A stretch of DNA of 61,568 nt, counting the filler, from Sluysia triapertura (Eukaryota): assembly GCA_046118255.1 (NCBI GenBank). It is 4 parts of 4 records of this genome, joined end to end, with 100 filler letters (N's around TTAATTAATTAA, not from the genome) between each part and the next. Parts side by side here need not be neighbours in the genome. Positions count along the whole stretch, not along the records: positions 34,169 to 49,575 come from JBJNIA010229234.1; 3 more parts are not named here. One strand, 5' to 3'. This document shows positions 36,419 to 39,778 of this stretch, in pieces. Every line of letters begins with the position of its first letter. Position 1 is the stretch's first letter. The notes under the pieces were generated by a model. The model did not search any database. It was not told where the DNA came from and worked only from the letters and a program-made list of their open reading frames with translations. A program made the position numbers and the translations under genes.

Positions 36419-36601
36419 CCGATGGATCGAGATTGGAGAATCCTAGATCTTCTAAATTACCGAAGTCAACATTAGGATGTTTTACTTCTCCTTCGGTGAT
36501 GTTGTGATAATCTTTGATAATTGAATCTATGAATTCCGAAAAGCAGTTGTAGCATTTAGTGTCGCCTGCACGAGGACACAGCGCTTTGCTGTTATAAGCA
36601 C
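36419..36601 (-). CDS. Phosphagen kinase exon F (domain 2 guanidino-specificity region)
   Basis: [61 protein letters not shown]. Confidence 0.9.
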
Positions 36602-37630
36602 CTAAAAGAAGAAATTTAAAGTTATATTAAATTGAAAATCATTTGAAATCGAAAAACACTAAACACTGAATAAAATTCGACATTTTGTACAAAACAAATC
36701 GCAACTTTCAAAAAGCTAAATTAATGCAAATATAGTATTTTATTCAATGATCATTTTTAAATTTAATAATAAGTAGACATTGAGATGAATATTCAATAAA
36801 TTACAACCTTGGATTTACAGGGTTAATCCTCTTGTCGAATAAGTTAAGCACTATTATATGATTTTTCATTTAATTTAATCCTATTTTTTAATGTGGTTGT
36901 AGAATTTAATGCTGTTATATTTAATGGTTTATTATTTAGTACTTTATTAATTAGGATACGAAACATATTAAAATATTTATCTTTATAAAGGTGGACTTAA
37001 GGTCTTTGATACAACGGGACTTGTAAAAACAATAATAATGGAGCATGGATATTAGATAAAATAACAAACATTGTTCATTTGATGACATAACAGTTCACGT
37101 ACAATTTGAAAAGTCAAGCCTCGGCAATCAGTAACGTCTCCTGCAACACGGCTTACAGGTAGAGATATGTTGTCCGAGTGATGCATGTCTCATAAATAAG
37201 CTCGATACTAAAGCTTGATACCACATCATCAACCGTCCAAAAGTTTGTTGCATAAATATACAAGTCTTTTCTTTCAAGACTTCACAAGTATATGCTCTTT
37301 TAGCCTTTAATTCACGCGAATTGAAATTTAAAATTTTAAGTATAATCATTTTTTATTTTTAAAGGCGATACAGCTGTCGACATGAGAATATTGTTATAAT
37401 TAATTAACTTAATGTTACTCGATCTACTTGGTGTCGGACGTGCGGTCACACGACTCGCAATCGTTGTCAAATGTGCAACGGTTCTAAAACTCTTTGTCTG
37501 AATCTTGCGAAAAAAGAAACAAGACGTTCACGCATAATGTCTTCATTCCGCTGGCAGAAAAGAATGCAATAACGATGAAGAAATGGTTTTATATTTCCAG
37601 TTTCACATATTTCTATATAATTTTATATGA

Positions 37631-37685
<55 letters not shown>

Positions 37686-39778
37686 TGTTAATTTATATTG
37701 CGCTCATATCTACTGCAAAGTAAGTACTCAAAAGCTCTTAAAATAAATCATTCATTATAATATTTCTGAAACAGAAAGAACTATGTCTTTTTCTTAAATG
37801 TTTCATTATCTTCCACTAATTTGACATTATCTGATAACTGGTTGTATATTTTGAAACATAAACGATATACAATTTATCACATAGCTCTTACTATCACTGC
37901 GGATTCTTTATAGATTATTATTATGTCTCAATGAAATATTCATCTTGATTTAAGAGATATTCAGCACTTCCGTAATGTAAACATTTGTAAATTATTGTCA
38001 TGATTTTGAATTCTATTGGCAACCAATGTAAATCCTTAAGATAAGGTGTTATATTAGACCTTCTTCCCACTTGGAGAATTAGTCTTGCTGTTTGATTAAT
38101 ACAAGTACAAGATTTAAACAATTTTATTTCTTATTTTGGCAAAACTAAATGGCATTACTAACAATTTCTAACACAATGAGCCAATGTGCTGCCATTTTTA
38201 GTTCGAATAGTATTATACTTATCCACCATATCTTTTGTTAGGTACTTCTTGGTAATACTTATGTTGTTTTCGTCATTCCAGATCAGTTTTGCTAAGAACT
38301 CCAAAGATTCTACGGCCGGGACGCCAGCTGAATGATAAAAGAAGTGTTAAATAATAATTAATTGACTTTATAACTATCTTTTCAGAAATAGTTTCCGATT
38401 GTAAAATTAAAAATATAAATTCTTAAGCATTAAGTATTAATAAAAACAATATGAGAAATTGAGAATGAACACTTTCTTTTTAATAGTCATTTGTTCACTT
38501 AGCACCTTTAGTCTAATTCACATGTCACGATAATACTATTAAATATATAAAATAATTTTTTTCAAAATTAACCTACTATTTATTATTAAGTAGATAATTT
38601 ACTGCTAATATTGTTTATTAAAAAATAATTTCATAAATTCTTTAATTTAAACAATATTTCTAATTAGTCCATTGATCTATTTCTTATAAGTAAACGTACT
38701 AACGTGGTGCAGTTTTGTTGTAACGTGCCAACATTTTTTCCATTTGAATCATCGATGTAATGCCAGTATACATTTCTTTAGCTACATCAATTTCACTTAA
38801 TCCTAATCTTCGTTTATTACTTATATCATAAATATCACCAATATTTTCCGTATGTTCACCAAAAGTAAGTCTGGTTTGTAACTTATGCGATGAACATATT
38901 TCCTAATATATATATATATATATATATTAAGTTCAATTAAAATATTTGAAAATTAATTATTATTGCGTTTTATTCTATTGACAATAAGTAGTAATAAAAA
39001 AATTAAAAAAATTGTCACTTTAAAATTCGGTAAACTTGAAGCATATGGTAGTCTTATGTGAACACTGGCACGCATTGTAGTACCGATATTGGATGGACAA
39101 AATGTCAAGAAGCCGTATTTATCACTACGTTCAAACTCAATGGTATCTTCTAATACTCGAAGACCCTAAAATTAAAATTATTAAATTTAAATATTTACAA
39201 ATGTGTTTTGTATTAAAAATGAAAAAATTTATTTATTTTTCATTTTCATTAATGTCGATCTTTTATCTTGAAGAATTAAGCAAGTTATGAATCATGAAAA
39301 AATTTTAGGGTAAATAAGCGTTTAATCTAAAATAGATGAAATATGCAACTTTCATTTGTAAGTAGCTAATATTTAATAAAAAAAATGTAAAATGTGTAAC
39401 AACAAACCGTTACAAGTCTTCTATAAACTTGAGGTAGATCACCACCATTTTCCATGGAAATAATACTTATATGATCTTCTTCATTAACCCATACTACAAA
39501 AGTTTTAGCTTCATTTATAAAAAATCCTCGACCATTAGGCCAATTAATGTAGCCACCAGCATCATTAAGAATACTAAATTAAATAAATCAATTTTTGTCA
39601 ACAATGTATTACTTTTAATAGTCATTACTATATAAATAAATATTTTAAATTACTTATCATCATTTCGAAACATAAAATGATCTTTGACAAATTCTTCCTG
39701 CACTTCTGGTTCCATGGTTTCTAACTGATAAAATGTTCCTTGTAAAGATCCGGGCATAGTTGCTAAACTTTCTTCCAC
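36419..39778 (-). CDS. Two-domain phosphagen (guanidino) kinase, taurocyamine kinase-like; partial gene, 6 exons
   Basis: Exons 39778-39654, 39573-39408, 39165-39019, 38902-38704, 38327-38163, 36601-36419, all GT-AG and in frame. Motifs [63 protein letters not shown], then linker [15 protein letters not shown] and a second N-domain ([43 protein letters not shown]). Confidence 0.93.
37000..37575 (+). mobile_element. Possible piggyBac C-terminal relic inside the kinase intron
   Basis: NGAWILDK near 37035 and [23 protein letters not shown] near 37432 resemble the NAWILY motif and Cys-rich tail of piggyBac transposases. Confidence 0.35.
37633..38121 (-). mobile_element. L2-clade LINE 3' fragment with (ATT)n tail, in kinase intron
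   Basis: [41 protein letters not shown] matches the L2/Crack ORF2 C-terminal motif (AARL...HITP.L..LHWLP...FKI..YK.LH). Confidence 0.88.
38163..38327 (-). CDS. Phosphagen kinase exon E (start of domain 2)
   Basis: [55 protein letters not shown]. Confidence 0.9.
38704..38902 (-). CDS. Phosphagen kinase exon D (end of domain 1 and linker)
   Basis: [66 protein letters not shown], no stop codon. Confidence 0.95.
39019..39165 (-). CDS. Phosphagen kinase exon C (active-site Cys, CPSNIGT)
   Basis: [49 protein letters not shown]. Confidence 0.95.
39408..39573 (-). CDS. Phosphagen kinase exon B (NEEDH motif)
   Basis: [55 protein letters not shown]. Confidence 0.95.
39654..39778 (-). CDS. Phosphagen kinase exon A (domain 1)
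   Basis: [41 protein letters not shown]; different frame from ORF track 39660..39845. Confidence 0.9.

What the first reader, a model, noticed from the sequence alone, without database searches (positions are those of the whole stretch)
36419..39778. Two-domain phosphagen kinase of the trematode taurocyamine-kinase type
Seen: domain 1 reads through without a stop into a linker and a second N-terminal domain. The domain-2 specificity loop [16 protein letters not shown] lacks the SG..N.DSGVG.YA.D of arginine kinases. Known (recalled, not searched): the Schistosoma-type contiguous-dimer TK has SLPNFKEIC, YNKGAPEGVMPVEPL and GATLAHMIRNGAYNNRSICPRTGE, all closely matched here. Inference: if this AT-rich, short-intron genome is not a flatworm (it has the look of a reduced parasite such as an orthonectid, which I cannot confirm), the distribution of this enzyme is wider than usually described or involves transfer. 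The ORF track misses the gene completely.
Basis: partly seen in the sequence, partly recalled or inferred. Interest (0 to 1): 0.7.

Follow-up and report, generated by a model that had tools for sequence, protein, structure and literature searches.

The report
Flatworm-type two-domain taurocyamine kinase fragment
The stretch holds six cleanly spliced exons from the middle of a two-domain energy-buffering enzyme gene (taurocyamine kinase type) whose named relatives are all flatworms, so it is most likely an ordinary flatworm gene, not evidence of gene transfer.

Summary
On the minus strand, 39778-36419 carries six GT-AG exons (985 nt, 328 codons, no stop). They encode the catalytic part of domain 1, a linker and the N-terminal domain of domain 2 of a contiguous two-domain phosphagen kinase. 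Each of the five exons searched in the PDB matches Schistosoma mansoni taurocyamine kinase (4wo8) best; the sea-anemone two-domain arginine kinase is far behind.

The domain-2 specificity loop is the flatworm TK type, not the arginine kinase type. All seven splice junctions agree in phase and spacing with the introns published for Clonorchis TK.

In ML trees the fragment sits inside a 100/100 clade whose named members are all Platyhelminthes (planarian, cestodes, trematodes). Its sister is an unnamed UniParc protein (64% identity). Molluscan and cnidarian two-domain AKs are excluded.

Caveats:
- Only residues ~149-476 of ~716 lie in the piece.
- Domain 1 has lost a conserved ATP-binding arginine (R to S) and evolves about 4.5 times faster than its sister.
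- The neighbouring MAPK-like gene is broken.

A truncated or decaying copy therefore remains possible. This is a new member of a known kind, of low interest.

The parts
39654..39778 (-). Exon a. It encodes the domain 1 catalytic domain, aligned to residues ~149-190 of the flatworm TKs. The acceptor corresponds to CsTK intron 202.0 and the donor is phase 2 (243.2).
   Evidence: AG/GT sites. PF00217 profile positions 7-44. tblastn to P0005, P0155, P0156 and P0158 residues 149-190.
39408..39573 (-). Exon b. It holds the NEEDH motif of domain 1. The conserved Arg (Limulus AK R229) is replaced by Ser, codon AGT at 39467-39465.
   Evidence: 4wo8 domain 1 scores 74.8 bits against 66.9 for domain 2, and the ungapped match to 1m15 is 199-248. 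The R to S change falls in a column that is at least 95% conserved.
39019..39165 (-). Exon c. It holds the CPSN active-site cysteine (C271) and R280, and ends ...SLPNFK. The donor is phase 0 (354.0).
   Evidence: 4wo8 8.4e-27; the 1m15 match 253-290 places C271 and R280.
38704..38902 (-). Exon d. It begins with EIC and covers R309, E314, the flexible loop, the end of domain 1 and the start of the linker (..YNKTAP). The donor is phase 1.
   Evidence: 4wo8 domain 1 residues 295-360, 72.7 bits. The same two exon boundaries occur in a trematode-like genomic contig, L002. G to L is at 38869-38867 and G to D at 38836-38834.
38328..38703 (-). Bridge intron between domain 1 and domain 2 (376 nt, phase 1, GTTAGT...CAG).
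   Evidence: It corresponds to the 'bridge intron' 426.1 of Clonorchis TK (PMC3836730) and of Schistosoma TK (PMC12702037).
38163..38327 (-). Exon e. It encodes the linker and the first half of the domain 2 N-terminal domain (..[24 protein letters not shown]).
   Evidence: PF02807. 4wo8 6.4e-20 against Anthopleura AK 0.011. 76% identity to P0005.
36602..38162 (-). Intron of 1561 nt, phase 1, inside the guanidino-specificity region (position 97.1 of domain 2). It carries a retroelement tail fragment at 38130-37924 and an (ATA)n-type run near 37640-37700.
36419..36601 (-). Exon f. It holds the domain 2 specificity loop (C)[17 protein letters not shown] and the rest of the N-terminal domain up to ..NLDPS. 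The donor is phase 1 (167.1). The next exon is not in the piece.
   Evidence: 4wo8 5.3e-30 (domain 2 54.9 bits, domain 1 48.8) against Anthopleura AK 2.2e-07. Alignment. Nothing further was found downstream.

Best explanation
This is a genuine, partial copy of the flatworm-type contiguous two-domain phosphagen kinase gene, the 'taurocyamine kinase' of trematodes. That lineage arose from an arginine-kinase ancestor by tandem duplication and fusion.

The six exons encode the catalytic half of domain 1, the inter-domain linker and the substrate-recognising N-terminal half of domain 2. A complete protein would transfer the gamma-phosphate of ATP to a guanidino compound to buffer cellular ATP; taurocyamine is inferred as the substrate by homology with the assayed trematode enzymes.

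The host is most likely an AT-rich platyhelminth from a lineage with no named sequence in the databases.

What is shown: the exon structure, the family, the domain order, the TK-type specificity loop, the clade and the intron positions. What is inferred: the substrate, expression, and that the missing exons lie beyond the piece.

Domain 1 is probably catalytically weakened, because a phosphate-binding arginine is replaced. Domain 2, as far as it is present, is better conserved.
For: - Pfam catalytic and N-terminal domains lie in the right order.
- All 12 splice sites are canonical, and 328 codons are free of stops.
- Of the six exons, the five searched in the PDB (b-f) each match 4wo8 (S. mansoni TK) best, and the N-terminal exons do so by 13-23 orders of magnitude over any arginine kinase.
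- The nearest full-length relatives are P0005 at 64% and flatworm TKs at 50-54%, against molluscan two-domain kinases at 43-47%.
- In the ML tree the flatworm clade has 100/100 support and holds the fragment, and win+P0005 has 100/99.
- In the domain trees the domain 1 part falls among flatworm D1s and the domain 2 part among flatworm D2s (99*), inside a flatworm N-terminal-domain clade (100*) on a stem of 0.8.
- The alignment shows the flatworm-only loop RNCAYNxxA-xCPRxGD and the long YNKxAP..VEPL linker.
- The junction phases 0, 2, 0, 0, 1, 1, 1 and their spacing match Clonorchis TK introns 202.0, 243.2, 300.0, 354.0, 426.1 and D2 97.1, 167.1. Two of these were verified directly on a trematode-like genomic contig.
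- C271, E225, R280, R309 and E314 are kept (ungapped PDB matches).
Against: - Only residues ~149-476 of ~716 are in the piece. The 9.8 kb upstream and 2.2 kb downstream hold no further exons.
- The fragment departs from 6 of 67 columns that are at least 95% conserved, three of them radically (R to S in EEDHxR, RG to RL, GG to GD).
- Its domain 1 branch is 0.54 against 0.12 for the sister.
- The neighbouring MAPK-like gene is broken.
- In the best tree the fragment's group lies beside, not inside, the named flatworms (support 86/65 and 87/74). A flatworm host is therefore inferred and not proven.
Confidence: 0.8

Rival explanations
1. The copy is a truncated or decaying paralogue (pseudogene or gene relic) of the flatworm TK gene. 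It lost its 5' exons, perhaps through the retroelement insertions upstream, and no longer makes a working two-domain enzyme.
For: - No domain 1 N-terminal exons lie within 9.8 kb upstream, and there are no domain 2 catalytic exons downstream.
- LINE-like remnants lie directly upstream of exon a and inside an intron.
- A phosphate-binding Arg is lost and two conserved Gly are replaced in domain 1.
- The domain 1 branch is 4.5 times that of the sister.
- The adjacent MAPK-like gene carries an in-frame TAG and a frame change.
- No annotated protein of the window itself appeared in either protein search.
Against: - There is no stop or frameshift in 328 codons, and all 12 splice sites are intact.
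- About 5-7% of random point changes in this CDS make a stop, so more than about 40-60 neutral changes (4-6% divergence) would probably have broken it. Most of the extra divergence therefore arose under selection for an open frame.
- The domain 2 N-terminal part is well conserved: 70-76% identity to P0005, branch 0.27 against 0.14.
- Trematode TK introns can exceed 4 kb, and the downstream side ends in an assembly gap and the piece's edge.
Confidence: 0.3
2. The host is not a flatworm (for example an orthonectid, a dicyemid or another small spiralian). The TK-type two-domain gene would then be older or more widespread than Platyhelminthes, or it was transferred.
For:
- In the best tree the fragment, with three unnamed sequences, lies outside the clade of named flatworms, with weak support.
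- The genome is unusually AT-rich.
Against: - Every named member of the 100/100 clade is a platyhelminth, and no named non-flatworm carries the TK-type loop. The mollusc and nemertean 'TK-like' entries have the arginine kinase loop.
- Grouping with the planarian Dugesia is not rejected (p-AU 0.42), nor is grouping with Neodermata (p 0.06).
- All seven intron positions and phases are kept, which argues for vertical descent.
- Planarian genomes are also AT-rich (my own knowledge), and the Dugesia and P0005 proteins are FYMINK-rich like this one.
Confidence: 0.07
3. It is an ordinary two-domain arginine kinase of the molluscan or cnidarian kind.
For: It shares the two-domain architecture. NCBI labels several molluscan proteins 'taurocyamine kinase-like'.
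Against: - The specificity loop lacks the SGVxNLDSGVGxYA of those proteins and has the flatworm loop with a deletion.
- The Anthopleura two-domain AK scores 2e-07 against 5e-30 for S. mansoni TK on that exon.
- The trees separate them with 100/100 support.
Confidence: 0.01

Closest known systems
Schistosoma mansoni taurocyamine kinase (PDB 4wo8, 716 aa, contiguous two-domain)
   Same: It has the same domain order, the same linker motif (YNKxAP..VExL), a specificity loop of the same type and length (AYNxxxxCPRxGD), and the same exon boundary at K|EIC. It is the best PDB match for the five exons searched in the PDB.
   Different: Identity is only about 51% over the 328 residues (Schistosoma rodhaini homologue). 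In domain 1 the window has Ser where 4wo8 has Arg in EEDHIR, and RLTF where 4wo8 has RGTH. Only the middle 46% of the protein is present in the window.
Clonorchis sinensis / Paragonimus westermani TK genes (13 exons, 12 introns; PMC3836730)
   Same: All seven junctions of the fragment have the published phases and spacing (202.0, 243.2, 300.0, 354.0, bridge 426.1, D2 97.1, D2 167.1). These include positions that the paper does not list as shared with molluscan AK. Tyr87 of CsTK domain 2 (the Y of DYH) is kept.
   Different: At the CsTK domain 2 positions H61 and I63 the window has K and L. Substrate use was assayed for CsTK but not here.
UniParc UPI0005FF5391 (P0005, 546 aa, organism not given)
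   Same: It is the sister sequence in every tree (100/99, 98*, 99*). Identity is 64% overall and 70-76% in the domain 2 N-terminal domain. It has a similarly AT-biased amino-acid make-up.
   Different: P0005 keeps the Arg and both Gly that the window has lost in domain 1, and its branches are two to four times shorter.
Two-domain arginine kinases of molluscs and cnidarians (e.g. Anthopleura japonica, PDB 4rf6; Spisula, Ensis, Lottia)
   Same: They have the contiguous D1-D2 architecture and descend from the AK lineage. According to PMC3836730, some intron positions are shared with molluscan AKs (97.1, 243.2, 300.0).
   Different: They have an arginine-type specificity loop (SGVxNLDSGVGxYAxD), a shorter linker and separate clades.
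Annelid taurocyamine kinases (Arenicola, Riftia)
   Same: They share only the name and the substrate.
   Different: According to PMC3836730 they belong to the creatine-kinase lineage, are single-domain and share no intron positions. They were not compared here by sequence.

Membership tests
Phosphagen (ATP:guanidino) kinase superfamily | An N-terminal domain PF02807 and a catalytic domain PF00217. | tested here: met
   PF00217 is found on exons a-d (profile positions 7-202 of 203, E down to 3e-17). PF02807 is found on exons e-f (positions 2-67 of 67). Matches to exons a and f alone fall just under Pfam's cut-off.
Phosphagen (ATP:guanidino) kinase superfamily | The catalytic residues of the transition-state site (Limulus AK numbering: R126, E225, R229, C271, R280, R309, E314). 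This list is my own knowledge of the 1BG0/1M15 structures. | tested here: not met
   In domain 1, E225, C271, R280, R309 and E314 are kept, but R229 is Ser (AGT, 39467-39465). Positions were placed by ungapped PDB matches and the alignment. R126 of domain 1 and the whole catalytic site of domain 2 lie outside the piece.
Flatworm (trematode-type) contiguous two-domain taurocyamine kinase | Two complete phosphagen kinase domains in one polypeptide, with D1 joined to D2 without a stop. | tested here: inconclusive
   The D1 to D2 junction is present and in frame across the bridge intron. The first 148 and last 240 residues are not in the piece.
Flatworm (trematode-type) contiguous two-domain taurocyamine kinase | A TK-type guanidino-specificity region, shorter than in arginine kinases (PMC3836730: 2-3 residues fewer), of the form AYNxxxxCPRxG[DE]. 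| tested here: met
   Domain 2 reads [13 protein letters not shown], aligned with all flatworm sequences and carrying the deletion relative to molluscan and cnidarian AK. The domain 1 loop is not in the piece.
Flatworm (trematode-type) contiguous two-domain taurocyamine kinase | Placement inside the clade of flatworm TKs, with D1 among the D1s and D2 among the D2s. | tested here: met
   100/100; the D1 part is sister to P0005 D1 at 98*, inside the flatworm D1 group at 87; D2 clade 99*, flatworm N-terminal-domain clade 100*.
Flatworm (trematode-type) contiguous two-domain taurocyamine kinase | The conserved exon-intron organisation, including the bridge intron. | tested here: met
   The phases and spacing of all seven junctions match the positions published for CsTK. 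The boundaries of exon d are identical in the trematode-like genomic contig L002. The mapping onto the paper's alignment numbering is my own arithmetic.
Flatworm (trematode-type) contiguous two-domain taurocyamine kinase | Kinase activity specific for taurocyamine. | not testable with these tools
   The activity was assayed only for the trematode enzymes (PMC3836730).
Molluscan/cnidarian two-domain arginine kinase | An arginine-type specificity loop (SGVxNLDSGVGxYAxD). | tested here: not met

The most novel reading that the evidence does not exclude
In that case the flatworm-type two-domain taurocyamine kinase, with its exact intron pattern, either predates Platyhelminthes or was acquired from a flatworm.

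A lesser novelty, also not excluded, is that domain 1 has become a non-catalytic pseudo-kinase domain in this lineage while domain 2 keeps working.
Probability: 0.07. Interest if true: 0.6.

Novelty: new member of a known kind. Interest (0 to 1): 0.2.

Why it matters
It matters little beyond annotation. Sequence databases already hold this two-domain TK type from planarians, cestodes and trematodes, so one more flatworm copy is expected. The assayed trematode enzymes are discussed as drug targets because the mammalian hosts lack them (PMC3836730).

Three points have modest value:
- The fragment and its unnamed sister represent a poorly sampled branch of the family. That branch could help date the AK-to-TK change of the specificity loop.
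- Domain 1 shows a lineage-specific loss of a phosphate-binding arginine together with a fast branch. If the gene is expressed, this is a natural case of one half of a contiguous dimer drifting towards inactivity.
- The case shows that NCBI's 'taurocyamine kinase-like' labels on molluscan and nemertean proteins do not reflect the specificity loop.

Tried and rejected
- **Word search with exon d alone:** no candidates, because of the tool's length window. The full HMMER search was therefore used.
- **Naming the organism:** this failed. Two SRR accessions of related contigs are in no paper. P0005 has no contig on record. P0155, P0175 and P0006 gave only accession numbers. A search with the domain 2 part of P0005 found no named closer relative. 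No tRNA or Rfam family lies in the piece.
- **Missing exons:** motif scan, paralogue tblastn, tblastn with ten references and a profile hmmsearch of all six-frame segments found nothing beyond the six exons.
- **Reads:** Neither the Arg-to-Ser codon nor the splicing could be checked against reads. Those places were sent to no search tool afterwards and were masked in later scripts.
- **Literature on planarian or cestode TK:** nothing relevant in the library.
- **ORFs at 41056-41953:** no Pfam hit and only a weak feature-based lead to LINE endonucleases.
- **Joined model:** the joined spliced model was never sent to any search tool; all searches were made exon by exon by reference. The exons were joined only inside local scripts, for alignment and trees.
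Full report
**What is in the sequence.**

The piece 34169-49575 is very AT-rich (GC 0.20-0.30 in 1-kb windows) and has one assembly gap at 35153-35418. The feature lies on the minus strand. Stop-free segments with phosphagen kinase motifs resolve into six exons:
- exon a, 39778-39654
- exon b, 39573-39408
- exon c, 39165-39019
- exon d, 38902-38704
- exon e, 38327-38163
- exon f, 36601-36419

Each exon is preceded by AG and followed by GT; three of the donors read GTTAG. 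Joined, they give 985 nt and 328 codons with no stop. At the local composition this has a chance probability of about 4e-14. Exons are 32-40% GC and introns 13-28%. The introns measure 80, 242, 116, 376 and 1561 nt. The finding's coordinates are exactly the outer exon boundaries.

**Family.**

Pfam places the catalytic domain PF00217 on exons a-d and the N-terminal domain PF02807 on exons e-f. The order is therefore catalytic end of one kinase unit, then linker, then the N-terminal domain of a second unit. This is the signature of a contiguous two-domain phosphagen kinase.

Searched exon by exon against the PDB (exons b-f; exon a was not searched there), the best chain is always 4wo8, Schistosoma mansoni taurocyamine kinase:

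| Exon | E-value, 4wo8 | E-value, Anthopleura two-domain AK (4rf6) |
|---|---|---|
| b | 1.7e-42 | 9e-30 |
| c | 8.4e-27 | 2.4e-23 |
| d | 6.3e-37 | 1.7e-22 |
| e | 6.4e-20 | 0.011 |
| f | 5.3e-30 | 2.2e-07 |

**Relatives and trees.**

A word search with one exon found nothing because of its length window, so the exhaustive search was run with exon d. The closest protein, P0005, is a 546-aa UniParc entry (UPI0005FF5391) with no organism given.

A word search with P0005 returned named two-domain proteins:
- a planarian, Dugesia sp., labelled taurocyamine kinase
- cestodes: Spirometra and Schistocephalus
- many trematodes
- then molluscs and cnidarians

The spliced fragment is 64% identical to P0005, 50-54% to the other flatworm proteins and 43-47% to molluscan ones.

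An ML tree (LG+C20+F+G4, 41 rows, 329 columns) puts the fragment in a clade of 18 rows with 100/100 support. Every named member of that clade is a platyhelminth. The fragment is sister to P0005 (100/99). Molluscan, ostracod/decapod, annelid and cnidarian two-domain kinases fall outside.

Two trees of separated domains were also built:
- The domain 1 part is sister to P0005 D1 (98*) among the flatworm D1 sequences.
- The domain 2 part falls in the flatworm D2 clade (99*). That clade sits within a flatworm N-terminal-domain clade on a stem of 0.8 changes per site (100*).

The duplication therefore predates the divergence of these flatworm lineages, and the fragment is an orthologue of the fused gene.

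**Specificity loop and linker.**

In the alignment every flatworm sequence, the fragment included, reads RN(C/G)AYNxxA-xCPRxG(D/E)xxCY in domain 2. Molluscs and cnidarians read SGVxNLDSGVGxYAxDxExY at the same place and are one residue longer in this alignment. The flatworm sequences also share the longer linker YNKxAPxGxx--xVE(P/S)L.

PMC3836730 reports that the loop of trematode TKs is 2-3 residues shorter than in AKs, and that the Clonorchis enzyme and both of its separated domains are specific for taurocyamine.

**Gene structure.**

The same paper lists the Clonorchis TK introns:
- 97.1, 140.0, 202.0, 243.2, 300.0, 354.0 and 426.1 (bridge) in D1
- 97.1, 167.1, 243.2, 300.0 and 366.1 in D2

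They are conserved in Paragonimus and Schistosoma. The seven junctions of the fragment have phases 0, 2, 0, 0, 1, 1, 1. They fall at residues about 149, 190, 246, 295, 361, 416 and 477 of the flatworm proteins. This fits 202.0, 243.2, 300.0, 354.0, 426.1, D2 97.1 and D2 167.1 once alignment gaps are allowed for.

Two of them were checked directly. In L002, a genomic contig from a public run whose product is 74% identical to Paragonimus TK, the homologous exon starts at ...aag|GAAATTTGT (K|EIC, phase 0). It ends at ...GCGCCCG|gtaagc (YNKGAP + 1 base, phase 1), exactly as here. Such conservation of gene structure argues for vertical descent.

**Host.**

The organism could not be named.

In the best tree the fragment, P0005 and two unnamed transcripts lie beside the group Dugesia + Neodermata. 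They do not lie within it, and the relevant branches are weak (87/74 and 86/65). AU tests do not reject a clade of fragment + P0005 + Dugesia (p 0.42). They only marginally disfavour a clade with cestodes and trematodes (p 0.06).

P0005 and the Dugesia protein share the fragment's AT-driven amino-acid bias. FYMINK fractions are 0.34 and 0.31 against 0.33 for the fragment, and 0.25-0.28 in cestodes and trematodes.

My reading is an AT-rich flatworm of a poorly sampled lineage. A non-flatworm host has no positive evidence; I put it at about 7%.

**Is the copy whole and working?**

Only residues ~149-476 are present. Ten reference proteins by tblastn and a family profile against every six-frame segment of at least 12 residues find nothing else in the piece.

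- **Upstream of exon a:** the 9.8 kb up to 49575 includes a retroelement tail-like peptide at 40024-39854 (a second copy lies at 38130-37924 inside the long intron). It also includes two 127-129-aa ORFs with only a weak lead to LINE endonucleases.
- **Downstream of exon f:** 2.2 kb remains, partly (AAT)n-like repeats around the gap, and then the piece ends.

Within the fragment, 6 of 67 columns that are at least 95% conserved are changed. Three changes are radical:
- Arg to Ser in EEDH-I-R. This is position 229 of Limulus AK by the ungapped match, and a phosphate-binding residue in the transition-state structures as far as I know.
- Gly to Leu next to R309.
- Gly to Asp in the GGxYD loop.

C271, E225, R280, R309 and E314 are kept.

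The domain 1 branch is 0.54 against 0.12 for P0005. The domain 2 N-terminal part is 0.27 against 0.14 and is 70-76% identical to P0005.

Against decay stand the open frame and the twelve intact splice sites. Since 5-7% of random point changes would create a stop, more than about 40-60 neutral changes would probably have broken the frame.

I conclude that these exons have been kept open by selection until recently at least. Domain 1 is probably impaired. A truncated or dying paralogue cannot be excluded (about 30%).

**Limits.**

I sent those letters to no search tool afterwards (the Rfam stop beside them) and masked them in later scripts. No read-level check of the odd codons or of splicing was therefore possible.
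- No RNA run holding the stretch was listed.
- The joined spliced model was not sent to any search tool. All searches were made exon by exon by reference, and the joining was done only inside local scripts for alignment and trees.

**Verdict.**

The family assignment is correct. This is a new member of a known kind, with a mildly interesting degenerate domain 1.

Noticed in passing
window 47954-48560 (+): This is the N-lobe of a MAPK-like protein kinase (Pfam Pkinase 3.8e-17; best PDB matches are MAPK6 and MAPK7) that looks broken. It has an in-frame TAG at 48194-48196 right after the glycine loop. The first Gly of GxGxxG is replaced (ICIGAFG). The frame changes just before the catalytic loop, which reads DSKNLKSANILV, so HRD is not kept. 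It is probably a pseudogene.
   Followed up: partly
window 38130-37924 (-) and 40024-39854 (-): Two copies of a retroelement tail-like peptide (..[29 protein letters not shown]..) are present. From memory it resembles the C-terminal end of metazoan non-LTR retrotransposon ORF2. One copy lies inside the 1561-nt intron and the other just upstream of exon a. Pfam found nothing.
   Followed up: partly
window 41953-41573 and 41442-41056 (-): Two adjacent long ORFs (127 and 129 aa) lie in 27%-GC DNA and have no Pfam family. A feature-based atlas search gives only a weak lead to endonuclease/exonuclease/phosphatase (LINE endonuclease) clusters. A third ORF of 137 aa at 43745-43335 is also unexplained.
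   Followed up: partly
window 34455-35576: A long (AAT/ATT)n-like low-complexity tract, translating as runs of N, D and I, surrounds the assembly gap at 35153-35418. A similar (ATA)n run lies at about 37640-37700 inside the long intron.
   Followed up: no
proteins P0001, P0003, P0157, P0166 etc.: NCBI's 'taurocyamine kinase-like' names on molluscan and nemertean multi-domain kinases do not match their specificity loops. The molluscan ones aligned have the arginine-kinase type loop. Lineus longissimus P0001 has three kinase units (1060 aa).
   Followed up: partly
I worked beside them and did not send them to any search tool afterwards.
   Followed up: no
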